This document shows positions 6,590 through 63,720 of a DNA stretch of 64,000 bases, piece after piece. The stretch lies in the NCBI RefSeq assembly GCF_006345805.1, contig NC_043008.1, forward strand, positions 31,620,001-31,684,000, written 5' to 3'. The notes beneath the pieces are model-generated. The model was not told the DNA's origin and did no database searches. It saw only the letters and a list, made by a program, of their open reading frames with translations. Positions within the stretch are counted from its first letter, which is position 1. The number at the start of each line of letters is the position of its first letter. The translations under genes and the position numbers were made by a program. The stretch is from Octopus sinensis (taxonomy: Eukaryota).

Positions 6590-6801
6590 GTTAGCAGTGT
6601 GCTTTGCGGCCATGCTGGATACGGCCTTGAAGAATTTTTAGTCGAATGAATCGACCCTGCTACTTACCATTTTTAAAGTCTGGTATTTATTCCATCAGTC
6701 TCTTTTGCCGAACCACTAAGTTACAGGAACGAATGCACCAACACCGATTGTCAAGCGGTGGTGGGAACAAATACAGACGCAAAGACACATGTACATAGAT
6801 G

Positions 6802-6843
<42 letters not shown>

Positions 6844-7040
6844 ATATTATATATATATATATTATATACATGCACGACGAACTTCTCTCAGTTTCCGTAT
6901 ACCAAATCCACTCACAAGGCTTTGGTTGGCCCAAGGCTATAGTAGAAGACACTTGCCCAAGGTGTCACGCAGTGGGACTGAACCCGGAACCATGTGGTTG
7001 GAAAGCAAGCTTCTTACCATACTGCCACGCTTGCGCCTAT
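6590..7040 (-). mobile_element. tRNA-derived SINE family B with internal (TA)n
   Basis: Homologous to the full copy at 44913-45323 (CCTTGGGCAAGTGTCTTCTACTATAGCC core; GGAAACTGA..AGAAG before the microsatellite). Confidence 0.8.
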
Positions 7041-8445: not shown

Positions 8446-8579
8446 CAGGCTGTGTGGTAAGTGGCTTGCCCAAGGTACCACTGTGTGGTACCTTGGGCAA
8501 ATGTCTTCTACTATAGCCTCGGGCCGACCAAAGCTTTGTGAGTGGATTTGGTAGACGGAAACTGAAAGAAGCCCGTCGA

Positions 8580-8613
<34 letters not shown>

Positions 8614-8840
8614 ATGTATGTATGTATGTATGTATGTGTGTGTGTGTTTGTCCCCCCACCCCACCATCGCTTGATAACCGATGCTGGTGTCAGCAAAAAC
8701 TTAGCGGTTCAGCAAAAAGAGAACGATATAATAAGTACTAGGCTTACAATGAATAAGTCCTAGGGTCGATTTGCTCGACTAAAGGCGGTGCTCCAGCATG
8801 GCCGCAGTCAAATGACTGAAACAAGTAAAAGAATAAAAGA
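8446..8840 (+). mobile_element. SINE family B with internal (TA)n(TATG)n
   Basis: Same head, core and tail (CTCCAGCATGGCCGCAGTCAAATGACTGAAACAAGTAAAAGA) as 44913-45323. Confidence 0.85.
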
Positions 8841-11718: not shown

Positions 11719-13948
11719 CTGTTTCAACACACGATTTCACATCAAAAATCTTGCAAAACAAATATTTAAACGTAAATATATATAGTCATGTATATATGCA
11801 TACATACATGCATACAACATCCATACATACACACGTACATCCGCGCCAACATATACAAGAGCAAATATTCAATTTGAAAAACATTTTGAAATTATATATA
11901 TTGATAAGTATCGTGAAGTAAAAGTTGATATTTTGAATTTATGTTTCTTGTTTAAAGACCAGAATAGATTTTAGCAGAATTATGTAATCCTTGAAATGAC
12001 TGACATTGCTAAAGTGCTAGCCATAGCTCTGATCATGACACTGCTGATACAGGATATGCAAAGGTAATAGTTTACCATAATCTAAGTTTAAGACTACAGA
12101 TGTTTTCCTTTAACTTCATGGCACCCGCAGTGATTACAAGTGTACCTACATTTATATGGTTGTTTTATAACGATGTGTTGCAACAAATCCTTTTATAGTA
12201 TGATGGGGCTAGCAAGAAATCACGACGTGAGCAAGGGGACGATTGCTGGGGATGTTAAATCGATTTAGGGATGAAGGCATATGCTTGCGGGCGCCGAAGC
12301 ATCCCCACAGCCCAATCGGGAGATATGAAGGCGGAGAGAGCACCAAAACCTCTTAACATCCTGAAGTACATGAAAAGTACATGTCACAATGAAGGAAAAA
12401 AAAATTCGAAAATGTTAGCATACGATCTTCAGCGTAAACAAAAGTAATCTGATCTTGTCAGACAGAACAGATAGGAGACTGAATCAGCTTTCTTAGGTGT
12501 TTCATTACAATAACGTCTGAGTAGTATCATTTTAGTCAATGTAACTGTATTTATAACCTTAATAAGTTATGTTATTACAACCGGCACAAAGCTGTAGCGA
12601 ACAGCGACGAAAAAGCTAAGTGACGTTTCGGAAACAAATTCTCATTTTTACACAGTCAAACAAATCCTCGATCCATTGTCGCAGCCTTTTTGCACTCGGC
12701 GATTAATGGGAATGTACTGACCTCATGAACTTTCTCGGAGCATTCTTCAGTTAATTCTGATCAAAGACGAAGAACCCTATTGTTTTAGCTGACCTAATTT
12801 GGATACCAGTAAGTTATATAAACACATGCAGATAAATATCTTCCTCTTTTTGATCAATCGTCCCTGGACAAACAGTGACCTTGTCAGTATGTTGACCAAC
12901 GCGTGCGAAGGTAGATCTCCTACTGTGTCATAACAGCCAACACCTATCTCTGCCGTTGGAACTACCACTGCCTTGATTGTTTTACTGTCTTTCTCTTTAG
13001 CTACACAGTGATGAAGCTAGCCTCCACACACAATGACCACGGAACAAGAGACAAATATTTTACTGCATCTACAAACTAGGTATACACACAAACAGACAAC
13101 TCGTCAAGGTTGTATATAATATTTCTTATATATTGTAACGACTGATATCGTAACCAACTTAATGAATGGCCATGTTAATAACCTATCAATTATTGTTATT
13201 CAATCATTTCTCCGATGCTTCATAACTAGAGACTCCGTCGTTAAAAACGTTACAAACTATCTTATTTACATTATAAAGTTGTATTATCGAAAACCATCGC
13301 TAAGTTGTGTCAATGTACCCACCGCTTAGCTGTTTCAAAACAACTAATACTGAGCTGTTTCTTAAAAAGCTAAGAACTGTGTATATAAAAGCTGAGATAT
13401 TACAAATATTACCATTGAACTGTTTCATTTAAATAACCACAAAATTTTAACATTACAACCACTGTTAAGTTATTTCATTATTACCACCACTGAGTTGTGT
13501 CATTACATAGTAATGATTTCATTACTATAAACGATGTTTCAATATAACCACAGCTCAGCTGTGTCATTACTGCCAAAACCTACTTGTGTCGTTACAACTA
13601 CCACCAAGTTATTTTATAGCAATCAGCACTGAGTTATGTCATTACAGCCAACACTGAAGTCATTACACGTCAACTACCTACACTCTTTCATTGCAATCAG
13701 CCTTTATCTGCACCATTTTTAAATAAACTGCTGAGGCGATCATTGCAATCACAATCGAGTCACGTCATTACAACTATTGCTGATCTATGACATTACAACA
13801 GTCTTAACTGTTTCACTATATGTATGTTCGAACTGAGCTTTGCCTAGGTACTACTGACCAGTATCGTTACAATCATGGCTGTCTTTATTTATTTATCCAT
13901 TTGTCTATCAATTTGTTCATCTGTGTATCTAGCTAACTAGCTTCATAC

Positions 13949-13949
<1 letters not shown>

Positions 13950-13996
<47 letters not shown>

Positions 13997-14045
13997 GTAT
14001 GTAGGTAGGTAGGTAGGTAGGTAGGTAGGTAGGTAGGTAGGTAGG

Positions 14046-14076
<31 letters not shown>

Positions 14077-14099
14077 GTAGATAGATAGATAGATAGATA
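13950..14099. repeat. (GATA)n/(GGTA)n array flanking the 3' end of the Tx1 cluster
   Basis: Directly visible tetranucleotide array. Confidence 0.95.
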
Positions 14100-15494
14100 T
14101 GTTTCTTTATTAGCTACACAGGGCTGCACACAGATAGAACAAATTACAAGGTAGAGCTTTTCTTTTGAAGGTTTAAAAAAAAAAAAAAAAAAATTAAAAT
14201 ATTAAAATAAAAAATAAAATAAAATAAAAAAGGGGGGGTCGATCAAAAGGGATCGTAAAAGGAGAGAAAGAGGACAAAAAAAGGGGGGGTTAAAAAAAAA
14301 GGGGGAGAGGAAAAAAAATTGATCAATAGGGATCGTTATCACAGAAATGTCAATATGAAGTGTAAAGGGGAGGACAGGTGAGGTTTACCCGTGGAAAGAA
14401 AAGCCTACGGAAAAGACCACGGTAACCTCGGTCAATGAAGTCACATGTTATATTTCTTTTTTTTTTTTTTTTTTGCAAATAAGCAACTCTCTGTATTAAT
14501 TTTTACGGTTCATAGAATCATAGTCAAGGTGGCTTCGTCATTCATACGTGCCATCCTTGCTACATTCACCCATCTTTTTTTAAAACATTCACTAGACAAA
14601 ACTTGCCTCTCTACTCTCACTTTTTTCTTCAAGTGATACTTGAAGAAGTTGATGAGAGATTGACCAGAGAGGAAAGTGTTTCTCTCTAATCCTTTCAGAC
14701 GCGTCCACCAGATACATTCTTTCGCCATAGCCACAAGTATGATAAAAATAGCTCTTCCTTCCCGTTTGAAGGAAGGAGGCGTGACGATATTAACGATAGA
14801 CTCGGCTGATAAACCGACACGTCCCACACGTGACAGCAGTCGTTCGACATAAGCCCACAGGTGGGAAATTGCTGGACACTGCACGATTGGGTGCAGAGCG
14901 GTTTCGTCGCTCTGCCCGCATCTCGGGCAGGTCGGCCCCGTGTTTCTCGAGCCATGCCTATAGAGCTTATCCCGAACGGGTAGCGCTTCTCGGTAGCACC
15001 GCCAGGCCAGGGATCTCTGGAAGTTGTCCATAGGTCCCGGGCCGAAAGTCGTTTGAAACAGGCGGGTCAGGTATTCCTCGTCGACGCCCAGGTTTGCCCC
15101 GAGCTCGTCGTCGTACCTCCCCTCCACTAATCCCCTATAGAATGCTTGGTTGTGTTGAAGTCACTCAAGGTCGACCCGGGACGGCAGAGTTGCTTGAGAG
15201 CAACGCGACACTCGCGGTGCCATTCGCCCTTCTTCGGCCTCTTTTTGATCCACGACTGTAGTTCGGTCATGGAGACGAGTTGCGGGAATGCGTGCCTCAC
15301 AAACGGCGACCACACCTGTTCACCGTCGTCTACATAGAGCCGGAGATGTCGCAGTCTCAGCGCGTGTCTGCGCATCATCAACCACGGCATGCCCAGCCCT
15401 CCTTTTAACGGGTGTTGACAGCAAATGGATCGCCTGACCATCGGGACGCATCCTTTCCACAAGAAGCGGAAGAGGATGCGTTCTAGTTTGGTGA
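14100..15494 (-). mobile_element. Tx1/L1-clade LINE copy 1 (subfamily A), 5'-truncated
   Basis: ORF2 C-terminus from TKLERILFRFLW to the stop at 14510, with CCHC CPRCGQSDETALHPIVQC and a 1-nt frameshift near 15140. Both ends abut (TATC)n. Clearly diverged from copies 2 and 3. Confidence 0.92.
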
Positions 15495-15558
<64 letters not shown>

Positions 15559-15859
15559 CTTTCTTTTATTAGCCACACAGGGCTGAATACAGAGGGGACA
15601 AATACAAATGCAGAGCTTTTCTTTTCGAGGGTGGAAAAAAATAAAAAATGTAAGATTGCGATCAAAAGGGATCGAAAGGAGGAAAAAAAGGAAAAAAAAG
15701 AAAATCGTGTATCACAGAAATAATGGTGTAAACATTGATATAACAAGATTGGGTTCATCCGTGGGAAGAAAAGCCTACAGAAAAGACCACGGGAACCCCA
15801 GTCAGGGAGGAAATAAACACATGAGGTCAAAAATGCTCTCTTTCTTTCTTTTTTACGAT

Positions 15860-18800
15860 CTACAGGATCATGCTCAAAATGGTTTCGTTACTAGCACGCA
15901 CCATCTTTGCAACATTCACCCATCTTTTTTTGAATCTTTCGCGAGACAAAACTTCCCTCTCCATTCTCACCTTCCTTTTCAAGTGGTACTTGAAAAAGTT
16001 GATGAGCGATTGGCCAGAGAGGTAAGTGTTTTTCTCTAATCCTTTCGCTCGAGTCCACCACACACATTCTTTCACCATGGCCACCAGTACGATGAAAACT
16101 GCCTTGCCTTCCCGGTTGAGGGAAGGGGGCGGAGCAATTCTCACGATAGACTCGGCCGATAGGCGGATTCGTCCCACACGTGACAGCAGCCGTTCGGCAT
16201 AAGCCCACAGGTCGGAAATGGTTGGACATTGCACGAGTGCGTGCAGAACGGTTTCGTCGCTCTGACCGCATCTCGGGCAAGTCGGTCCAGTGTGTCTGGA
16301 ACCGTGTCTGTAGAGCTTATCCCGAACAGGTAATGCTTCTCGATAGCACTGCCAGGCCAGGGATCTTTGGTGATTGTTCATAGGTCCCGGCCCGAAAGTT
16401 GTCCTGAACAGGCGGGTCAGGTGTTCCTCGTCGACGCCCAGACTCTGCCCGAGTTCGTCGTCGCACCTCCCCTCCACTAATCCTCTATAGAATGCCTTTG
16501 TTGTGATGGAGTCGCACAAGTTCGGTCCCGGACGGCAGAGTTGCTTGAGAGCAACGCGACACTCGCGGTGCCATTCGCCTAGCCTCGGTCTCTGCTTGAT
16601 CCATGACTGTAGTTCGTCCAAGGAGACGAGCTGCGGGAAAGCGCGCCGCACAAAAGGCGACCACCCCTGTTCACCGTTGTCTATGAAGCGCCGGAGATGT
16701 CGCAGTCTCAGCGCATGTCTGCGCATCATCAACCACGGCATGCCCAGCCCTCCATTTAGCGGGTGTTGGCAGCAAATGGATCGCCTAACCATCGGAACGT
16801 TTCCCTTCCACAAGAAGCGGAAGAGTATGCGTTCCAGTTTGGTGATGGTAGGGTCGGGACAAGGCACGACGGTCAGACGATACTCGATGACGGATGCGAT
16901 GTACGCGTTCGCCACCTCCGCCCGACCTTTTAGGGATAGCTTTCTCTCAGTCCATTTCTGGGTGAGAGTAGCCACCCTAGTCGTTATCTCGCCCCAGTTC
17001 TTCTCCATTTGGAGGTCCGGACCGAACCAGACCCCGAGCAATTTAACCGGTCCGTCCGTCCAGCGTCCCACGATGGAGACGCTGTTGGACGGCATGGGCT
17101 TGCTTCTCCAGGTGCCGAGCCGCAAGCCCACTGACTTTTCCCGGTTAATTTTTGCTCCCGTTACCGCTTCGTATTCTTTCAGTGTCTCGCCGACCAGCTC
17201 GATGTGCTCGTAGCTCGACACTATGACGGTGACGTCATCCGCGTATGCAGACACATTCCTCCCGCTTCCCAGCTCTCGTGGGATGCCCCTCAGCGTCGCC
17301 AGTTTCCGCAGTAGTGGCTCAAGAGTCAGTACATACAACAGCGATGAGAGGGGGCATCCCTGACGAACCGAACGCATGATGTTAAAAGGTCTGGATAGAT
17401 GACCATTTACGCGAACTACTGAGCGGATGCCGCTGTATAAGGCAGCGATCCAACCGCGGAAAACTGGACCGAAACCAGCCGCCTTGAGGACAGCCTCCAA
17501 GTAGTGATGGTCTACCCTATCGAAGGCTTTTGATTGATCCAAATTGATCAGCGCCCCACCCATGCCAGGATTTTTAACTACCCTGTCTATGATGTAGCGC
17601 ATCAGGTGGAGGTTGTCATGAATACTTCTACCCGGCACGGCGCATGTTTGCGCCTTGTCGATTAGTTTCTTGATGACAAGCGCCAACCTCTCGGCTAACA
17701 CCTTGGCCAAAATTTTCAAATCTGCGTTGAGCAGAGTGATGGGCCTGAAATTATCTATGGCGTCCCCCTTGTTTGGGTCTTTCTTGATCAGTGCCACTGC
17801 TCCTCGCTTTACAAAAGCAGGAATACTCCCGTTCTGCTGCCAGTTGCAGTAGACAGCTGCCAAGACGCCTCCAAACAAGTCTGGCATATGAAAATAAAAT
17901 TCGTAGGGCAGACCATCCAAGCCTGGTGACTTGTCTCTCGCGCAGCCTACCATCGCATCCTGTACGTCCGCAGCTGTGATAGGCTTTTCACAAGACTCCA
18001 CCTCCCTTGCTGAGAGTCGTGGCAAGGCATGCAGGTAGGCACTAAAGTCCACTCTGCTTTCTGACTCACCACTTGTCCCAAACAGTTGGGTGAAGTGTTG
18101 TTGAAAAACCCCACACATCCTTTTAGGCTCGAGCAATTCGCGCCCCTGTTTATCTATAAGAGACTTGATGGTGGCTCTGTTGCCTCGTTGCGTCTCCACC
18201 ACTCGGGCCTCTTGGGCGGCTCCAACTCCTTCGTTCCTCAGAGCACGCATCCTTCGTGTTTGGCGTTGAGGTGTTGGTCGAGGGCCAATCTCGCCGCCAG
18301 TACGTTGGACGCGATGCCAGTTCTAAGTGCCTCTTCTAAAACCTTAACTAAATCTCCCTCTATTCTATTTCGGTCTAATGCTAGGGCTCTACTGTATCTG
18401 ACTGATTCTGCTTTAATCGCTTTTTTTAGGGCATACCACCATCTGTTGTTGATGATGGTACCCGTCAAAACTCTCTTAACTAATGTGCTGATCCGGTCCC
18501 TGTAAACCTGTCGTGCTGTAAAAGACGCGTTCAGTTTCCAGTAACCAGGACCCTGCCTATGTGTCTTATCTAAGTCAAGTGTACAAGTCACAAACTTGTG
18601 ATCTGTGTAACTGACTATATGAAATTGTGGACAACCTACACTATTTTTATCTATTGTCCTACAGAAAACTCTATCTAAGTATGATCTGGACGACCCGATG
18701 CGGTTACTCCATGTCCACATTGGCACATTCGGGTGGTCCAGTCGGTACCTGTCAGACAGTTGGAAACGTCTGAGCAGGTCTTTGAGGCATTTGCATCCCC

Positions 18801-19278
18801 TTCTATTGCTATCTCTGCCCACGTAGTCTAGATGCGTGTCCAGGGTGGCATTCCAATCCCCCACTAAAAGTAAAGGACGAGACGTTCCCATGAAAGACTC
18901 TAGACGTCGAAAGAAATCTGGTCGGCCTGTTAAGGACGGAGCATAAACTGCTATCAGTCGAAAAGCACACTCATTGCTGCCATCGACATCCAAAATGACC
19001 AGCCTACCCTCCGGGTCTAGGAAATTTGCTCTTACTTTGAGATCCAGACTCTTCCGGATAAGCACCGCGGTGCCACCTCCGCCCATTCTCGGTAGACACG
19101 GAAAAAAATAAATGTTGAAATGTGTACCGAAAATGTGCTGGAGTGCCCGCAAGCTGTGGAGTCTGGTCTCACTGATGGCTATGATATTCAGATTTAGTGA
19201 CTTGATGTCATTTAACAGGTAGCCTTGTTTCCAAGGCGACCCCAAGCCACGTACATTTATACTACCTATTCTGAGCAT
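15860..19278 (-). pseudogene. LINE ORF2: APE endonuclease + reverse transcriptase + C-terminal CCHC, one frameshift at ~18245
   Basis: APE motifs GSINVRGL, ISET, AVYAP, GDWN, SYLDR, YTDH. RT motifs KSPGLDG, FRPITLLNAD, LDQSKAFDRVDH, VRQGCPLS, YADD. CCHC CPRC..H..C. Corresponds to the 352-aa and 796-aa ORFs in the track. Confidence 0.95.
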
Positions 19279-19320
19279 GTTCCGATAAAAGTGCAAAAAA
19301 GGAAAAGGAGAGAGAAAAGG

Positions 19321-21478
19321 TTACTTGTTTTTCGAAAGTTCTTTGTCTTTCACCTCACGGTCTTCTTCTATGAGGCTTTTATACAGTTTTTTCGATGAGT
19401 ACTTTTGAAATCTCCCTACTGCATCAGGGTAAAGAGATTTCAGGGTGCTGTATGTGTTCTGTGTCACGTGTATTATTTTAATGTGTTGTGGTGGTGTTGT
19501 GTGTGGGTGGTTACTTGTTTTTATGTCGTTTTCAGTAATGTTAGTGTTTGACCTAATGTGTTCCATTAGGTCGTGGTTGTTTGTGTTTATGGCTGTCAAC
19601 ATTTTTGGGGGGTTTGATGATGGTGTGTTTGTGTTGATGTGTGTGTTTTCTGTGGATGTTTTTGTTTCGGGAGTGGTGTATCTTCCCGCTTTGTTTGTTA
19701 TTTTTTCTTTTCTTTTTTTCCCCTTTTTCTTCTCCCCCCTGTGGCTATTTGCCAATCTTCCGTGTCTTCTTCGTCTAATGACAGATCAGACGAATCGGAG
19801 TCTGGAAGAGGGAAAGTATTGGGGTCTATTGTCGACTGTGTTGGTTTTGTTGTTGGTGTTGGTTGGTGAGCGTTTGGTTGTGGTGTATGTGATTTTGGAT
19901 GTGGGGTTTGGGTATTTTGTGTTTGAGTGATTGTGGGTATTGTGTTGTTTAGGGTCTCAATTTTGTGGGGATTTGGAGTTGTAATTGTTTCTTCATTTTT
20001 GCTGGGTGTCTTTTTGGCAGATGTCCTTGGTTTGGGAGTTGGTATATTCTTGGTTGTTGTTGTTGGTGATGCTGCTTCTGTTCTTGGTGCTGCAGTTGGT
20101 GTGGTTGTTTGTTGGTGAGGTTTGTTCCTGCAAAAAGTGGTGTGGGTAGTAAACCTTGTTTATTTGTTTTTGTTTCCGGCTGCTGTTGTTGTTGCTGTTG
20201 TTTTCTTGCGGCAGATTTGCAGTCTTTTTTGAGGTGTTGCTCACTGCCGCATATGTAGCAACGTGGTCTTCTGCCATCGACGACCACATATAACTTGTGG
20301 TCGTCTGATACACATATCTGGGTGGGTATTTTTTTTATATCTTCATGATGTATATGTAGAAGAAATTCTATTTTTTTTCCCACCCAGTTTTTATGCTCTG
20401 TGACTGTGGTTTCCAAAATAGTATAATTCGCCATTTTTACGCATAAGGCCTTTACAAGCCATAGACTATTGGCTATTTTGGGGACATTGTTTAGAGTGAT
20501 CTTAGTCACTTTCTGTCCCCGATAGCTTGGTGTAAGTTGGAGTTCATCTGAGTGAAGAGTTAGCGTTGAGAAATGTCTAGCTAACTCTTCGGTGTAGAAA
20601 ACAACTTGTATGTGGGCAAATTTGTTCCACCAGGTTACATATTCTTTGTGATCCCAGATGGGTTTCAAGCACTTCTCTATTTTGCTTGTGTTGGCCTTCT
20701 CTGGGATTTTTGTTTTTTTTGTTAACTATTTTATAAATGATTGTTCGTCTTTTTTCATTTTCCAAAATATCTTCTGGTATGTTTATTTTTACTATACCTT
20801 CTGATTCTGTTATTTTGATGTTCGTGTCCTGTATTTGTTGAGCCGTAAAGTATATTGTTGTTTTTTTTTCTTTAATCGCCTCAGCGAAATTTGTTGTTGT
20901 TTTGTTATTGTTGTTGCTTGTGGTGATGTTGTTGTTGGCTGCAGTTTGTAAAATTGGTGTGTTTGGTTCGGTCGTGCAAGTAGGAAGGGGTGGAAAATTG
21001 CCTGCGTACTTTAGTCCTGCACAAGGGCAAATTTCGACATTTCGTTTGCTTGTCGTCGTTATTTTTTCACTTGTTGGTGATGGAGTGAGCAGTGGTTGAA
21101 GGGAATTGTTGTTGTCGTCGTCGTTGTTGTTGTTGTTGTTGTTATTGTCGTTCTTGGTGACGGCGGTGGTGTTGGTAGTATTAGTAGCATTGACGGCACG
21201 GTCTTTGGTGGCGGTGATGGTGATGTTGTGTTGTTATTGGTGGCGATATCTTTAGTAGGGATAGCAGTTTTAGTAGCAGATTCTGCCATGGTGTTGGTGG
21301 TGGTGGTGGACTCACTGATGGTGTTGACGGTGCTTGGCCTTGCGACCTTTGTTTTGTATTTGTTGCTGTTGATGGTGGTGGAGTTGTCAGGTTCGGCGTA
21401 TGCTAACAGAGCATCCTGTTTTTCTGTTTGTGCGTCACGCTTGACTTGCACCTCAGCCTCGTGGTGGCCAGTGGCCAT
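19321..21478 (-). pseudogene. LINE ORF1 (gag-like, CX2CX4HX4C zinc knuckle), interrupted by several frameshifts
   Basis: ATG in strong context (AAAATGG) at 21478, Thr/Pro-rich N-terminus, CYICGSEQHLKKDC in the 19949-20668 ORF, and a stop at 19321 just before ORF2. Confidence 0.8.
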
Positions 21479-21699
21479 TTTGGAAATAAAATGGCTAAAT
21501 GAAACCACGAAGGCTATGAGAGTTTTTTCTTTTAAATTTTGCCCACAAGGGGCAAAATTTTGTGTCGATATTTATCAAAGGTTTACAGTGGATGTTGTTG
21601 CACAACTTTTAAGCACAAAATGTTTGTCAATATACACTTTTAAATAGTCAAAATAAATGATTACCTTCGGAGCTGAAACGACATCACATCCGTCAATAG

Positions 21700-21732
<33 letters not shown>

Positions 21733-21733
<1 letters not shown>

Positions 21734-23405
21734 CTTTCTTTTATTAGCCACACAGGGCTGAATACAGAGGGGACAAATACAAATGCAGAGCTTTTCTTTT
21801 CGAGGGTGGAAAAAAATAAAAAATGTAAGATTGCGATCAAAAGGGATCGAAAGGAGGAAAAAAAAGGAAAAAAAAGAAAATCGTGTATCACAGAAATAAT
21901 GGTGTAAACATTGATATAACAAGATTGGGTTCATCCGTGGGAAGAAAAGCCTACAGAAAAGACCACGGGAACCCCAGTCAGGGAGGAAATAAACACATGA
22001 GGTCAAAAATGCTCTCTTTCTTTCTTTTTTACGATCTACAGGATCATGCTCAAAATGGTTTCGTTACTAGCACGCACCATCTTTGCAACATTCACCCATC
22101 TTTTTTTGAATCTTTCGCGAGACAAAACTTCCCTCTCCATTCTCACCTTCCTTTTCAAGTGGTACTTGAAAAAGTTGATGAACGATTGGCCAGAGAGGTA
22201 AGTGTTTGTCTCTAATCCTTTCGCTCGAGTCCACCACACACATTCTTTCACCATGGCCACCAGTACGATGAAAACTGCCTTGCCTTCCCGGTTGAGGGAA
22301 GGGGGCGGAGCAATTCTCACGATAGACTCGGCCGATAGGCGGATTCGTCCCACACGTGACAGCAGCCGTTCGGCATAAGCCCACAGGTCGGAAATGGTTG
22401 GACATTGCACGAGTGCGTGCAGAACGGTTTCGTCGCTCTGACCGCATCTCGGGCAAGTCGGTCCAGTGTGTCTGGAACCGTGTCTGTAGAGCTTATCCCG
22501 AACAGGTAATGCTTCTCGATAGCACTGCCAGGCCAGGGATCTTTGGTGATTGTTCATAGGTCCCGGCCCGAAAGTTGTCCTGAACAGGCGGGTCAGGTGT
22601 TCCTCGTCGACGCCCAGACTCTGCCCGAGTTCGTCGTCGCACCTCCCCTCCACTAATCCTCTATAGAATGCCTTTGTTGTGATGGAGTCGCACAAGTTCG
22701 GTCCCGGACGGCAGAGTTGCTTGAGAGCAACGCGACACTCGCGGTGCCATTCGCCTAGCCTCGGTCTCTGCTTGATCCATGACTGTAGTTCGTCCAAGGA
22801 GACGAGCTGCGGGAAAGCGCGCCGCACAAAAGGCGACCACCCCTGTTCACCGTTGTCTATGAAGCGCCGGAGATGTCGCAGTCTCAGCGCATGTCTGCGC
22901 ATCATCAACCACGGCATGCCCAGCCCTCCATTTAGCGGGTGTTGGCAGCAAATGGATCGCCTAACCATCGGAACGTTTCCCTTCCACAAGAAGCGGAAGA
23001 GTATGCGTTCCAGTTTGGTGATGGTAGGGTCGGGACAAGGCACGACGGTCAGACGATACTCGATGACGGATGCGATGTACGCGTTCGCCACCTCCGCCCG
23101 ACCTTTTAGGGATAGCTTTCTCTCAGTCCATTTCTGGGTGAGAGTAGCCACCCTAGTCGTTATCTCGCCCCAGTTCTTCTCCATTTGGAGGTCCGGACCG
23201 AACCAGACCCCGAGCAATTTAACCGGTCCGTCCGTCCAGCGTCCCACGATGGAGACGCTGTTGGACGGCATGGGCTTGCTTCTCCAGGTGCCGAGCCGCA
23301 AGCCCACTGACTTTTCCCGGTTAATTTTTGCTCCCGTTACCGCTTCGTATTCTTTCAGTGTCTCGCCGACCAGCTCGATGTGCTCGTAGCTCGACACTAT
23401 GACGG

Positions 23406-23406
<1 letters not shown>
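21733..23406 (-). mobile_element. Tx1/L1-clade LINE copy 3 (subfamily B), 5'-truncated just after YADDV
   Basis: Almost identical to the 3' 1.67 kb of copy 2 (I see two substitutions and one A-run length difference). It begins TVIVSSYEH directly after (TATC)n. Confidence 0.95.

Positions 23407-23498
<92 letters not shown>
23407..23498. repeat. Pure (GATA)n array at the 5' flank of the Tx1 cluster (other spacers: 15496-15557, 21697-21732)
   Basis: Directly visible. Confidence 0.95.
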
Positions 23499-28799: not shown

Positions 28800-29123
28800 T
28801 TACATATACATACACATATACACACACGCAGAAACGTCAACACACTTACATACGTAAATACTCACATACATACATCTATACATACAAACATGCATGCATG
28901 CGTGCATACATACATGCATGTGTATATGCGTATATACATGCATACACATGTACACATCTGCATACGTATATGCATAGATGCATACATACACACATACATA
29001 CATACATACATGCGTATATGCGTATATACATGCATAGGTATGTACACATCTGCATAGTACATGCATACAGGCAAACATACACGCACACACATACATGTAT
29101 ACATACATACATACATACATACA

Positions 29124-29154
<31 letters not shown>

Positions 29155-30059: not shown

Positions 30060-30143
30060 TATGACCGGCCATAGCTTTTGACTTCCTAATATGTGTGTAC
30101 ATACACACACACATATATGCACGAATGTATGTATATGTGTATG

Positions 30144-30210
<67 letters not shown>

Positions 30211-30695
30211 CATGTATGCATGTATGTATGTATGTATGTATGTATGTATGTATGTATGTGTATGCATGTATGTATGTATGTATGTATGTATGTATGTATG
30301 TATAACCACATGTGAAGTAGTCTACATATGTCTGGGTTTGTTTGAGTCTAACTTCTTTCCGCTGTTCTTGCTGTCGAATGCAAAACAAAAAATTAAGTGA
30401 AAACATTACAAAGCGAGGCTATATAAACAAATACAGCGAGGATATATATATAAGACATATGATACTAGATTATATACACACGGTGTCGTGTAGGGATGTA
30501 TAAACACGAACAGAAAAAAGGAACCATCTTGCTCGCTTTTGTTTCTCAAAAGTCTTTTGAATTTTTTGAATAAATCTCTGAAGAGACAATGGAGGTTTTA
30601 TTTTCAGACAGCCCTGGGGAAATATTGTGCCTTAACCCTAAAATAAACAGAATCTAGGGATTTTTGTCCCTTTTTGTGGTTTGGGGCGAAGGTTG

Positions 30696-32632: not shown

Positions 32633-33052
32633 TATGTATGTATGTATGTATGTATGTATGTATGTATGTATGTATGTATGTATGTATGTATGTAGGTATG
32701 TATGTATGTAGTATGTATGTATGTAGTATGTATGTATGTATGTATGTATGTATGATGTATGTATGTATGTATGTATGTATGTATGTATGTATGTATGTAT
32801 GTATGTATGTATGTATGTATGTATGTATGTAGTATGTATGTATGTATGTGTATGTATGTATGTAGGTATGTATGTATGTAGTATGTATGTATGTAATGTA
32901 TGTATGTATGTATGTAATGTATGTATGTATGTATGTATGTATGTATGTATGATGTATGTATGTATGTATGTAGTATGTATGTATGTATTGTATGTATGTA
33001 TGTATGTATGTATGTATGTATGTATGTATGTATGTATGTATGTATGTATGTA
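32633..33052. repeat. Long (TATG)n microsatellite
   Basis: Directly visible. Confidence 0.95.
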
Positions 33053-38298: not shown

Positions 38299-38595
<297 letters not shown>

Positions 38596-38805
38596 AATAG
38601 TAACACACAAATTGTGCCTAAATCAGCGACAACCGTTCGATAGAATTTCATTCAATATAATCGTAAAAGATTAAATAGTGTTATGTGATTCCACCATCAT
38701 CATGCATAATTTAAACGTTCAATCAAGGACATAGCTTGTCAATCAGGGACATAGTTCAACAAGTGTTAAATGAAGAGAGATAGAGAAATAGACAGACAGA
38801 CAGGC

Positions 38806-39500: not shown

Positions 39501-40039
<539 letters not shown>

Positions 40040-44912: not shown

Positions 44913-45323
44913 AGGCGTAGGAGTGGCTGTGTGGTAAGTAGCTTGCTTACCAACCACATGGTTCCGGATTCAGTCCCACTGCGTGGCACCTTAAGCAAGT
45001 GTCTTCTACTATAGCCTCGGGCCGACCAAAGCCTTGTGAGTGGATTTAGTAGACGGAAACTGAAAGAAGCTCGTCGCATATATGTGTATGTATATATATA
45101 TATCTGAGTGTGCGTGTGTTTGTGAGTCTGTGTTTGTCCCCCCACCAACATCGCTTGACAACCGATGCTGGTTTGTTTACGTCCCCATAACATAGCAGTT
45201 CGGCAAAATAGAACGATAGAATAAGTACTAGGTTTACAAAGAATAAGTCCTGGGGTCGATTTGCTCGACTAAAGGCGGTGCTCCAGCATGGCCACAGTCA
45301 AATGACTGAAACAAGTAAAAGAG
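44913..45323 (+). mobile_element. Full-length SINE family B
   Basis: tRNA-like head (GTGGCTGTGTGGTAAG ... GGATTCAGTCCC), core, short internal TA/TG microsatellite and tail ending GTAAAAGAG. Confidence 0.9.
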
Positions 45324-46001
45324 TATATATGCCTTTGCCACTCTTCACTTATGCTGTACAATAACAGTTTAAATGTGGATCGAAAGCAATCGCATTGATA
45401 TCAAATCACAGATTGACTTCATAAGAAGTTATTATTCGCTAATATGTTGAGTAAAATGAACCGGAAATAAGCTTGCAAGCATGAAAAACCCTGGAATTAA
45501 GGAGTAATCGCTTTGCTTCGAAATGTTTTTATTATAGTAAACCTCAAAGAACTTCGAGTGAAACTGGTTTGTAAACATTAAAAGCTGAATAAAACCAGCT
45601 TGCTATCTCGATATCATGTTGTTTCTACTAATTATTTTTATTTTCACTCCGTATAAATGTCTTTTAAGTATGGGCTGTCACAATGATAGAAATTCCTGAC
45701 AAAACAACATTATCAGTGGAGATGAACCATAAGAAGAAACAAATGTCTTTTAAGCTGCTTGAGTGACTTTAGCTGCTCTCAGTTCGAGTTTAGTTCAACC
45801 CTTATTTAGAGTGTTAACAGGTTGCTCTCTCCCTCTCTTTCTCTCTAACCTTTCTTTCCTTCTTTCGTCCTTACATTCACATATGTTTTTCTTGTACTCG
45901 CGATAACGATTTATTTTTTTTACCAGCTGTTGTTGATTAGCCTCAAGTCAACCCCGGCCCGACCAAACAGTTGTGGCCATCTCGTCGTTTTCCAAAGTAT
46001 C

Positions 46002-47049: not shown

Positions 47050-47300
<251 letters not shown>

Positions 47301-47725
47301 AGACAGACAAATAGTTAGATAGAGAGATAGAGAGGGGGGTAATTATGCGGATAATCAAATTAGATATATTAAATATAACAGTTTGAGTATGAAATACAAA
47401 ATATGCGTTCATGTATGCATGCAAAACGAGAGAAAGCAAAGAGTGGAGACTTTCAGGAGAAGAATATATAAATATAAATATATAGATATCTATATTAATA
47501 GATCAGACTTACACAGAGTACAAACGACAGAGTAAATTAAAGTGGGATAAGAAAAGGGGTTATAAGTCCAACAGCTGTTTCTGAGGGCTCGGAGATCCAT
47601 CATAATGTTGGTAAATGTAGTTAATTACAATATGCGGCCGTAATGGAAGCAATCATAATTACCGCCATATCTGCTCAACTTGATCCCTCTTATATTCATT
47701 ATTTACCCTGTGGAATTGATCCGCT

Positions 47726-62496: not shown

Positions 62497-63310
62497 CTGG
62501 AAATCACAGCATAAAATATTTTACAAGAAAATTTAAATAACACGCATATAGTAGACTTTATGAATTAACTGATTCTACAAAAATATTTCTAGCCTTGCTT
62601 TAACGAGGTTAACAACAGAATGGTTTATATCAAATCAAAATACATTAGATACAAGAGAATGTTACTTATTTTGTACTAAAGATGAGCCTCATCGTCGTCA
62701 TTGTTTTACATCTACTTTTCATGCTAGCATGAGTTTGATGGGTTGATACTGTTCTTCAAGATAGATCAGAGAATTACATCTTGCTTTAAGTTTCAGTTTG
62801 GGCTTGATTTCTATGGCTGGATGCCCTACCTAACACCAACCACTTTAATGAATGCCTTCTTTGTTGAACCAGTACTAGAGAGGTGATCATACCTTTAACA
62901 AAACCAAAGGGTTCATTTAACTCCTTACTTAACAGAGTCTACTAGGTAAACTTTATCATAGTACCAGCACTAGAAAGGAGCAAGGAGAGAGAGAGAGAGG
63001 ATGGTAAGAGGTGGATAAAGGGTGAGGAGGGTAAAGACTGATGTCCATATCAAATGGCCGGAGGAGAGTATTAGTAAAGTTACAAACACACATAACCAAA
63101 ATACAGATCTACTGTTCGGTCCTCTCTCTTTCTATTTCTCTCCTTCACCTTCTTTCTTTCTCTCTTCCTTTTTCGACAATCCTCACTATCTTTCATCCTC
63201 CCGCCTATTTCCTCTTCCTTTCTATTTTTTTCTTCCTATCATACTATCATTCTTTCTCTTGTTCCTCTAAAATTATTGAAAATAATTGATTCAACCCTTT
63301 AGAATTTAAA

Positions 63311-63720
63311 CTCTTTTACTCTTTTACTTGTTTCAGTCATTTGACTGTGGCCATGCTGGAGCACTGCCTTTAGTTGAGCAAATCAACCCCAGGACTTATT
63401 CTTTGTAAGCCTAGTACTTATTCTATCAGTCTCTTTTGCCGAACCACTAAGTTACGGGGATGTAAACACACCAGCATCGGTTGTCAAGCAATGTTGGGGG
63501 GACAAACACAGAAGCACAAACATATACACACACACATATATATATATATACTTATATACGATGGGCTTCTTTCAGTTTCCGTCTACCAAATCCACTCACA
63601 AGGCTTTGGTCGGCCCGAGGCTATATTAGAAGACACTTGCCCAAGGTGCCATGCAGTGGGACTGAACCCGGAACCATGTGGTTGGTAAGCAAGCTACTTA
63701 CCACAGAGCCACTCCTGCAC
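63311..63720 (-). mobile_element. Full-length SINE family B in an intron of the host gene
   Basis: Homologous end to end with 44913-45323. Confidence 0.9.

What the first reader, a model, noticed from the sequence alone, without database searches (positions are those of the whole stretch)
13950..23498. Candidate (GATA)n-microsatellite-specific Tx1-clade retrotransposon: three independent insertions stacked in one array
Seen: three same-orientation copies (14100-15494, 15558-21696, 21733-23406). All six junctions are in (TATC)n on the sense strand. The three 5' ends differ (mid-ORF2, full length, just after YADDV), and copy 1 is a different subfamily, so these are separate retrotransposition events, not a tandem duplication. 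Known: Tx1-clade APE elements include sequence-specific families (Keno in U2 genes, Mutsu in 5S rDNA, Dewa in tRNA arrays, Kibi/Koshi in microsatellites). Inference: a cephalopod family whose APE endonuclease targets GATA/TATC repeats, active across at least two subfamilies. I cannot confirm it is absent from Repbase/Dfam.
Basis: partly seen in the sequence, partly recalled or inferred. Interest (0 to 1): 0.9.

Follow-up and report, generated by a model that had tools for sequence, protein, structure and literature searches.

The report
LINE copies stacked in GATA microsatellite
Three copies of an L1/Tx1-type jumping gene from an octopod genome sit head-to-tail inside one (GATA)n microsatellite, which points to microsatellite-directed insertion (a known habit of this kind of element, here with a new repeat motif) but cannot prove it from a single locus.

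Summary
Three minus-strand copies of one LINE lineage lie at 14100-15494, 15558-21699 and 21733-23406, and all six junctions are in (TATC)n on the sense strand.

- **Copies.** Copy 3 is 99.8% identical to copy 2. Copy 1 is 81-84% identical, so it is a different subfamily.
- **Native array.** The stack sits inside a pre-existing array. The outer upstream (TATC)23 abuts unique DNA, and the outer downstream array has the compound TATC/TACC form seen in empty arrays of this window.
- **Chance.** GATA arrays cover only 0.85% of the rest of the window, so random insertion is very unlikely.
- **Type.** The element has an APE domain, RT, zf-RVT and a CCHC ORF1, and its best solved relative is human L1 ORF2p. 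Tx1-clade membership could not be tested by phylogeny.
- **Relatives.** Related elements also stack head-to-tail: one family at a fixed target sequence, and an Argonauta stack of SINEs and a LINE around (ATT)n.

No other copy from the same genome could be reached, so family-wide GATA specificity is unproven. The mechanism (endonuclease choice or annealing of a TATC read-through or tail) is also unproven. Copy 2 is full length but defective. I rate it a likely new member of the known microsatellite-targeting LINEs.

The parts
13945..14099 (.). Downstream (3') flanking array. On the sense strand it reads (TATC)5 TACC (TATC)7 (TACC)11 TACATACC (TATC)13. It is compound, like the empty native arrays in the window.
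   Evidence: The comparison array is the empty compound array at 38430-38596.
14100..15494 (-). Copy 1: 5'-truncated, different subfamily. It carries the C-terminal third of ORF2 and an expanded 3'UTR, with one frame break near 15127. Its 3' end is ...GTAGCTAATAAAGAAACA|TATC.
15495..15557 (.). Pure (TATC)16 array (sense strand) between copy 2 and copy 1
15558..21699 (-). Copy 2: full length, about 6.14 kb. The 5' end is uncertain within 21696-21699.
15558..15859 (-). Copy 2 3'UTR. It ends in the conserved terminus CAGCCCTGTGTGGCTAATAAAAGAAAGT, with AATAAA 7 nt from the end and no poly(A).
   Evidence: The terminus is conserved in Argonauta LINEs and SINEs and in a JGI contig.
15860..18250 (-). 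Copy 2 RT part of ORF2, 796 aa (RVT_1 plus the zf-RVT zinc-binding domain)
   Evidence: RVT_1 E 3.6e-32, zf-RVT E 7.9e-8. (human L1 ORF2p E 4e-49).
18238..19296 (-). Copy 2 APE endonuclease part of ORF2 (ATG at 19278). It ends in a stop because of an out-of-frame deletion near 18250, relative to intact relatives.
   Evidence: Exo_endo_phos E 1.6e-14..
19321..21478 (-). Copy 2 ORF1 region. It has a low-complexity N-terminus, a core with one CCHC zinc knuckle, and a conserved C-terminal block, spread over at least three reading frames.
21700..21732 (.). Pure (TATC)8 array between copy 3 and copy 2
21733..23406 (-). Copy 3: 5'-truncated directly after the YADDV codons, 99.8% identical to copy 2
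23407..23498 (.). Pure (TATC)23 array upstream of copy 3. It borders unique DNA (...gctaaagtacgtaa) and not another element's 3' end.

Best explanation
**What it is.** A pre-existing genomic (GATA)n/(TATC)n microsatellite was hit at least twice, and possibly three times, by an L1/Tx1-group LINE lineage that integrates preferentially into such arrays. Insertions go in a fixed orientation (the sense strand reads TATC) and a fixed 3' register (...AGT|TATC).

**Proposed mechanism (inferred).**
1. The APE endonuclease nicks the bottom strand inside the array, at 5'-GATA^G.
2. The exposed ...GATA-3'OH primes reverse transcription at the conserved 3' terminus of the RNA (...GGCTAATAAAAGAAAGT).
3. Priming is probably helped by pairing with a few UAUC units carried on the RNA. 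The AATAAA signal lies only 7 nt from the element's end, so transcripts of resident copies should read into the downstream TATC units.
4. Incomplete reverse transcription produces the 5'-truncated copies.
5. The second-strand break also falls in the array.
6. Each insertion leaves TATC arrays on both sides, so the locus stays a target and copies pile up head-to-tail.

**Shown:** the anatomy, the native status of the outer arrays, the separateness of copy 1 from copies 2 and 3, and the same stacking habit in relatives.

**Inferred:** that the preference holds genome-wide, and which component (endonuclease or RNA-target pairing) sets it.
For: - **All six junctions are in TATC.** All three 3' junctions share the register |TATC, and all copies share one orientation.
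- **The outer arrays are native.**
  - (TATC)23 abuts unique DNA.
  - The 3' array has the compound TATC/TACC form also seen in the empty array at 38430-38596.
- **Random insertion is unlikely.**
  - Pure GATA/TATC runs cover 0.85% of the window outside the locus.
  - All copies of this lineage in the window (3 of 3) are in one array. None is found elsewhere.
- **Two subfamilies show the same junction.** They differ by 16-19% in nucleotide sequence.
- **The 3' terminus is conserved.** About 35 nt are shared by LINEs and partner SINEs of Argonauta, a JGI contig and the window. This fits recognition of the 3' end rather than of a poly(A).
- **Relatives stack in the same way.**
  - The ERZ21867824 family (42-44% aa identity) has constant 5' and 3' flanks in independent loci. 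It forms head-to-tail arrays in 5 of 9 contigs.
  - Argonauta locus L022 holds at least six same-orientation elements with this 3' end, around (ATT)n.
- **Precedent.** Microsatellite-targeting APE-type LINEs are an established category: Kibi (TC)n, Koshi (TTC)n, and crocodilian Tx1 families in (TTCC)n or (TTTC)n (PMC4494074, PMC3812793).
Against: - There is only one locus. No other copy from the same genome was reachable, and the best external identity is 79% nt.
- Five other GATA arrays in the window are empty.
- The nearest relatives do not use TATC.
  - One has (ATT)>=30 after the same 3' end (L003).
  - An Argonauta full-length copy has only about 4-5 ATT units after its end, which looks more like a tail than a target.
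  - Another Argonauta copy has a 17-bp AT-rich TSD and no microsatellite.
- The three inner arrays are 100% pure. RNA-templated tails would look the same.
- Copy 2 is coding-defective. This locus therefore says nothing direct about the specificity of its own APE.
Confidence: 0.6

Rival explanations
1. **Self-made tail plus tail homing.** The family ends in an RNA-templated (TATC)n tail, as its relatives end in (ATT)n, and it is not array-specific genome-wide. One copy landed in or next to a GATA array by chance. Later copies then primed on the tails of resident copies through tail-to-tail pairing.
For: - Relatives with the same conserved 3' terminus are followed by (ATT)n of very different lengths: >=30, 19 and about 4-5 units. 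This is typical of LINE microsatellite tails.
- The inner arrays are perfectly pure.
- There is no poly(A), and the junction register is fixed, as templating would give.
Against: - The 5'-most (TATC)23 has no element upstream of it.
- The 3'-most array is compound, like native arrays. At least one insertion therefore went into a native array, with a prior of about 0.85%.
- Tail homing puts younger copies downstream of older ones. Here the most degenerate-looking copy, copy 1, is the most downstream.
- An element with a TATC tail would still be expected to favour GATA arrays through pairing, so this rival merges into the main explanation.
Confidence: 0.25
2. **One event for copies 2 and 3.** During a single target-primed reverse transcription, the RT finished the full-length RNA (copy 2). 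It then jumped to the 3' end of a second RNA and copied 1.67 kb of it (copy 3) before joining the upstream array. The locus would then record two events, not three.
For: - Copies 2 and 3 differ by only 2 substitutions and one homopolymer indel.
- They are separated by a short, pure (TATC)8.
- End-to-end template jumping is known for non-LTR reverse transcriptases. This is from my own knowledge of the R2 and L1 biochemical literature and was not checked here.
Against: - Nothing in the sequence requires it.
- Two successive insertions of a young family give the same picture.
- It does not explain copy 1, which is a different subfamily.
Confidence: 0.25
3. **Assembly artefact or recombination product.** The near-identical copies 2 and 3 and the arrays between them result from mis-joining of reads at microsatellites or from unequal exchange.
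For: - Microsatellites and 99.8%-identical repeats are hard to assemble.
- Copy 2 carries frame breaks in A-rich, low-complexity ORF1 sequence, which could partly be homopolymer errors.
Against: - Copy 3 has a clean 5' truncation joined to an array that continues into unique DNA.
- Copy 1 is a distinct subfamily.
- Analogous stacks occur in independent assemblies of other species.
- The ORF2 break in copy 2 is a deletion of roughly 17-20 nt, not a homopolymer slip.
Confidence: 0.07

Closest known systems
Kibi and Koshi (Tx1 clade, teleost fish) and crocodilian Tx1 families that insert in (TTCC)n or (TTTC)n
   Same: They are APE-type LINEs of the L1/Tx1 group whose copies are flanked on both sides by one microsatellite motif (PMC4494074, PMC3812793). 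The domain set is the same: APE, RT and a C-terminal zinc-binding region.
   Different: - Their targets are polypyrimidine motifs: TC, TTC, TTCC and TTTC. Here the motif is TATC/GATA, which none of the papers I found lists as a target.
- Their specificity rests on many copies. Here it rests on one locus.
- The host is an octopod, not a vertebrate.
- Phylogenetic closeness to them was not tested.
Tx1L of Xenopus (inserts in the Tx1D transposon) and other site-specific Tx1 families such as Keno (U2 snRNA genes)
   Same: They choose another repeated sequence as target. The ERZ21867824 relative found here behaves this way: it has a constant target sequence and forms head-to-tail stacks.
   Different: The window's element sits in a simple repeat, not in a complex unique-sequence target.
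Dong/R4 in (TAA)n and Waldo or Mino (R1 clade) in (ACAY)n or (AC)n
   Same: They are microsatellite-inserting LINEs (PMC3812793). The (TAA)n motif is the one that follows the 3' end of this lineage's relatives in Argonauta and in L003.
   Different: - They belong to different clades. Dong/R4 is placed in the restriction-like-endonuclease R4 clade (PMC4640811).
- The element here has an APE and is closest to L1 ORF2p.
Mammalian L1
   Same: It is the best solved-structure relative (ORF2p, E 4e-49). Its priming depends on pairing between the RNA 3' tail and the nicked target. That point is established L1 biology and comes from my own knowledge.
   Different: - There is no poly(A) tail here.
- ORF1 has a CCHC knuckle and not the L1 type II ORF1p.
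- The 3' terminus is conserved and shared with SINEs.
- Copies stack at one site.

Membership tests
APE-type non-LTR retrotransposon, L1 group | N-terminal apurinic-like endonuclease domain in ORF2 | tested here: met
   Exo_endo_phos, E 1.6e-14, residues 12-233 of the 19296-18238 frame
APE-type non-LTR retrotransposon, L1 group | Reverse transcriptase followed by a C-terminal zinc-binding region, closest to L1 ORF2p among solved proteins | tested here: met
   RVT_1 E 3.6e-32 and zf-RVT E 7.9e-8. Human L1 ORF2p scores E 4e-49, against about 1e-21 for R2 proteins.
APE-type non-LTR retrotransposon, L1 group | 5'-truncated copies with a common 3' end | tested here: met
   Copies 1 and 3 are truncated at different points and share the 3' terminus with copy 2.
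Tx1 clade | RT domain groups with Tx1 reference families in a phylogeny | not testable with these tools
   No labelled Tx1 or Repbase reference sequences could be obtained. The supplement of PMC4494074 is not held, and database hits carry no clade names.
Tx1 clade | ORF1 of the RRM/zf-CCHC kind (a Type I variant), not the mammalian Type II ORF1p (PMC5203782) | tested here: inconclusive
   - There is one CCHC knuckle: E 7e-4, 20.0 bits, just under the 20.8 cut-off.
- The same knuckle occurs in the intact Argonauta ORF1 and, above the cut-off, in the ERZ ORF1.
- No RRM or Transposase_22 hit was found.
- ORF1 of copy 2 is broken.
Microsatellite-specific LINE (Kibi/Koshi kind) | The same microsatellite on both flanks in a large share of copies (more than 20% of flanks in PMC4494074) | tested here: inconclusive
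   In the window, 3 of 3 copies and 6 of 6 junctions meet it. All are in one locus, and no other genomic copy was reachable.
Microsatellite-specific LINE (Kibi/Koshi kind) | The microsatellite pre-exists the insertion and is not only a tail | tested here: met
   The upstream (TATC)23 borders unique DNA. The downstream array is compound, like empty native arrays. This holds for this locus only.
Microsatellite-specific LINE (Kibi/Koshi kind) | The endonuclease cleaves the repeat specifically | not testable with these tools
   This needs an in vitro nicking assay.
LINE with a self-made microsatellite 3' tail | The repeat is present at the 3' end only, and 5' flanks are unrelated | tested here: not met
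   In this locus the 5'-most copy has TATC upstream without an upstream element. In relatives the pattern is met or possible.

The most novel reading that the evidence does not exclude
An octopod LINE lineage, together with SINE partners that share its conserved 3' terminus, homes to microsatellites and has switched motif between lineages: (ATT)n in Argonauta and a JGI-sampled relative, (TATC)n here. It would do so through a short nick-site preference (bottom strand ...ATA^) combined with pairing of read-through repeat units on its RNA. Repeated insertion and target duplication would then seed, lengthen and interrupt the unusually dense tetranucleotide arrays of octopus genomes.
Probability: 0.2. 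Interest if true: 0.55.

Novelty: new member of a known kind. Interest (0 to 1): 0.4.

Why it matters
- **New target.** If the preference holds genome-wide, it adds a new target motif, (GATA)n, and a new host group, cephalopods, to the short list of microsatellite-targeting APE-type LINEs.
- **Test of retargeting.** Sister lineages share the same conserved 3' end but are followed by different repeats. They would be a natural system for asking how target choice is reset, by the endonuclease or by RNA-target pairing.
- **Genome annotation.** It bears on how microsatellites and retrotransposons shape repeat-rich octopus genomes. It also bears on repeat annotation, because stacks like this are easily merged or misread.
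- **Limit.** It does not change the known picture of how LINEs work.

Tried and rejected
**Searches for more copies of the same family (all failed)**
- A metagenome scan with a degenerate 3'-end pattern gave three chance bacterial hits.
- Genome-contig scans by protein and by DNA gave nothing.
- Viral-contig scans gave nothing related.
  - Close relatives sit on short contigs that end before or at the 3' terminus (L002, L004, L019, L020, L021).
  - The Logan unitigs all break exactly at the conserved terminus.
  - P0018 is not on record.

**Other lines that led nowhere**
- A search of the window for SINE partners with the same tail found none.
- I looked for short truncated copies next to the other GATA arrays (30696, 38430, 38774, 39787, 47050) and found none.
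- Rfam scans of the window, of the ERZ target and of L022 gave no hits.
- ARAGORN found no intact tRNA in the Argonauta SINE stack.
- Cluster names gave no clade label.
- Literature searches found no report of a GATA-targeting LINE.

**Rejected**
- Chance co-occurrence of three random insertions.
- Simple tandem duplication. The 5' ends differ, and copy 1 is a different subfamily.
Full report
**1. What is there**

On the minus strand the region reads, 5' to 3':

unique DNA | (TATC)23 (23498-23407) | copy 3 (23406-21733) | (TATC)8 (21732-21700) | copy 2 (about 21699-15558) | (TATC)16 (15557-15495) | copy 1 (15494-14100) | compound array (TATC)5 TACC (TATC)7 (TACC)11 TACATACC (TATC)13 (14099-13945) | unique DNA.

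BLAST of the copies against one another gives:
- Copy 3 against copy 2: 99.8% over 1674 bp.
- Copy 1 against copy 2: 81.5% over 1120 bp, or 84.3% over 996 bp in a second run.

The only differences between copies 2 and 3 are two substitutions and one T-run indel.

The 3' ends are ...GTGTGGCTAATAAAAGAAAGT|TATC (copies 2 and 3) and ...GTAGCTAATAAAGAAACA|TATC (copy 1). The register is the same each time and there is no poly(A). The 21-nt terminus is not expected by chance.

The 5' ends all differ:
- Copy 3 starts directly after the YADDV codons (...TATCTA|CCGTCATAGTG).
- Copy 1 starts at TCACCAAACTAGAAC, about 480 aa into the RT frame.
- Copy 2 carries a 5'UTR of about 220 nt before the first ATG of ORF1 (21478). 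The two full-length Argonauta relatives have 190-240 nt.

**2. What kind of element**

Copy 2 encodes three things:
- An APE endonuclease (Exo_endo_phos, E 1.6e-14; ATG at 19278).
- A reverse transcriptase with the zf-RVT zinc-binding tail (E 3.6e-32 and 7.9e-8).
- An ORF1 region with one CCHC knuckle, just under Pfam's cut-off.

The best solved relative is human L1 ORF2p (E 4e-49). R2 proteins score about 1e-21. This places it in the L1 group.

The ORF1 type (CCHC, no Type II L1 ORF1p domain) is what PMC5203782 describes as consistent with the Tx1 clade. The O. vulgaris repeat annotation lists L1-Tx1 among its recently active LINEs: 13 families and 421 insertions (PMC13282606). I could not obtain labelled Tx1 references, so clade membership by RT phylogeny remains untested.

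The nearest database proteins are 71-76% identical on short NCBI, JGI and ENA contigs. Two Argonauta hians proteins are 60-66% identical. An octopod origin is therefore reasonable, but the window's own species is not in the collections: the best nucleotide identity is 79%.

Copy 2 is not intact:
- Compared with the intact relative P0001, it lacks roughly 17-20 nt between the APE and RT parts. The APE frame therefore stops at 18238 and the RT continues in another frame.
- ORF1 is spread over at least three frames in A-rich, low-complexity sequence. Some of these breaks may be homopolymer errors of the assembly. The ORF2 deletion is not.
- Copy 1 has one frame break near 15127.

**3. Is it more than chance, and is the array a target or a tail?**

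Pure GATA/TATC runs of at least four units cover 464 bp in five arrays outside the locus. That is 0.85% of the remaining window.

No other fragment of this LINE lineage occurs in the window. All copies present are therefore in one array, and three random insertions are excluded for practical purposes.

Two facts show that the array is native and not only self-made:
- The 5'-most (TATC)23 is preceded by unique sequence, not by an element's 3' end.
- The 3'-most array has TACC blocks. This is the same compound style as the empty array at 38430-38596, which reads (GACA)(GATA)(GGTA).

At least the first insertion therefore went into a genomic array. The later ones went into TATC again, in the same orientation and 3' register. 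Copy 1 belongs to a subfamily 16-19% diverged from copies 2 and 3, so at least two independent events are recorded.

**4. Evidence from relatives**

(a) *ERZ21867824 family.* This ENA assembly holds a large family that is 42-44% identical in the RT frame.
- In ten loci the element is flanked by the same sequences. Upstream: ...GAATATTCATCTCGGTGTTAAGT. Downstream: TAACTCCAGCCTAACACTTTGGCAGTCAGACTGA...
- In 5 of 9 contigs, two or three full-length copies lie head-to-tail at that site.
- Site-specific insertion that regenerates its target, and so stacks, therefore occurs among this element's relatives.

(b) *Argonauta locus L022.* The LINE here is 65% aa identical. The locus holds at least six same-orientation elements that end in the same conserved terminus:
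- a SINE-like unit;
- a short 3'UTR fragment followed by (ATT)19;
- three copies of a 157-bp SINE separated by TATTTGT-like spacers;
- a full-length LINE followed by AATTATTATTATTAT.

(c) *JGI contig L003* (72% aa). It ends ...GTGGCCAATAAAAGAAATC followed by at least 30 ATT units.

(d) *Argonauta locus L001.* A full-length copy plus a further unit with the same 3' terminus are bracketed by a perfect 17-bp duplication, TATTTTTAAAATTTGTA. No microsatellite is involved.

An alignment of twelve 3' ends shows about 35 conserved terminal nucleotides shared by LINEs and SINEs. This fits a reverse transcriptase that recognises its own 3' end.

The sequence just after the end often begins with TAT. It reads TATC in the window, and TATTTGT, TATTTTT or TATTATT in several Argonauta junctions, though not in all of them. 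A short nick-site or pairing preference would fit this, and every unit of a GATA array would satisfy it. This last point is my inference from a small sample.

**5. Mechanism and rivals**

The best-supported reading is array-directed target-primed reverse transcription:
1. A bottom-strand nick in (GATA)n.
2. Priming from ...GATA-3'OH on the conserved RNA terminus.
3. Probable help from UAUC units carried by read-through, because AATAAA lies only 7 nt from the element's end.
4. 5' truncation.
5. Regeneration of target on both sides, hence stacking.

I put this at about 0.6.

The main rival (about 0.25) is that TATC is a self-made tail, by analogy with the (ATT)n of relatives, and that later copies homed to tails.
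- For it: the three inner arrays are perfectly pure, and one Argonauta copy has only about 4-5 ATT units.
- Against it: the native outer arrays.
- In practice a TATC-tailed RNA would still favour GATA arrays, so the two readings differ mainly in which component sets the choice.

Copies 2 and 3 could be one event with template jumping. This does not affect the main conclusion. A misassembly is unlikely but cannot be excluded without reads.

**6. Comparison with what is known, and novelty**

Microsatellite-targeting APE-type LINEs are known:
- Kibi in (TC)n and Koshi in (TTC)n.
- Crocodilian Tx1 families in (TTCC)n or (TTTC)n.
- Waldo and Mino in the R1 clade.
- Dong in (TAA)n. Dong/R4 is placed in the restriction-like-endonuclease R4 clade (PMC4640811).

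These come from PMC3812793 and PMC4494074. I found no report of a GATA/TATC target, and none of target preference for octopus L1-Tx1 families. I could not check Repbase or Dfam.

If confirmed, this is a new member of a known kind, with a new motif and a new host group. The interest is moderate. The anatomy is clean and the parallel in Argonauta is suggestive, but the central claim rests on one locus and the decisive census could not be run here.

Noticed in passing
L022:1480-8200 (Argonauta hians, GCA_054771915.1): A stack of at least six same-orientation elements that share the LINE's conserved 3' terminus. It comprises SINE-like units, a 3'UTR fragment followed by (ATT)19, three 157-bp SINE copies and a full-length LINE. 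It indicates a LINE-SINE partnership and a stacking habit in this lineage.
   Followed up: partly
L009-L018 (ENA ERZ21867824): A large LINE family, 42-44% aa identical to the window's RT. It inserts at one fixed sequence (...GGTGTTAAGT | TAACTCCAGCCTAACACTTTGGCAG...) and forms head-to-tail arrays of two or three full-length copies. The host organism and the nature of the target repeat are unknown, and Rfam gave no hit.
   Followed up: partly
L001:4864-10662 (Argonauta hians): A full-length LINE plus a downstream unit with the same 3' terminus are together bracketed by a perfect 17-bp duplication, TATTTTTAAAATTTGTA. This suggests retrotransposition of a read-through transcript of an already stacked source locus.
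   Followed up: no
window:39495-40040, also 63306-63717, 44921-45325, 8475-8840, 6637-7028: A multi-copy SINE-like repeat whose two halves are separated by a variable microsatellite block. In the copy at 39690-39872 the block includes a (GATA)n array, so some GATA arrays of this genome lie inside SINE copies.
   Followed up: partly
window:7776-7833: An interstitial run of about 10 TTAGGG telomere-type repeats
   Followed up: no
window: whole; for example 32633-33052, 47050-47331, 28847-29153, 30125-30303: The density of tetranucleotide and compound microsatellites is very high. Examples are (TATG)106, (TAGA)74 and (GACA)(GATA)(GGTA) blocks. TRF lists 93 rows in 64 kb.
   Followed up: no
window:16503-17213 and 22679-23389 (+ strand): A 236-aa open frame lies antisense to the RT coding region and is identical in copies 2 and 3. 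It is probably a by-product of the codon composition of the sense frame. It was not examined.
   Followed up: no
window:14175-14318: The 3'UTR of copy 1 carries expanded A-rich and G-rich runs (plus strand) that copies 2 and 3 lack, so its 3'UTR is about 100 nt longer.
   Followed up: no
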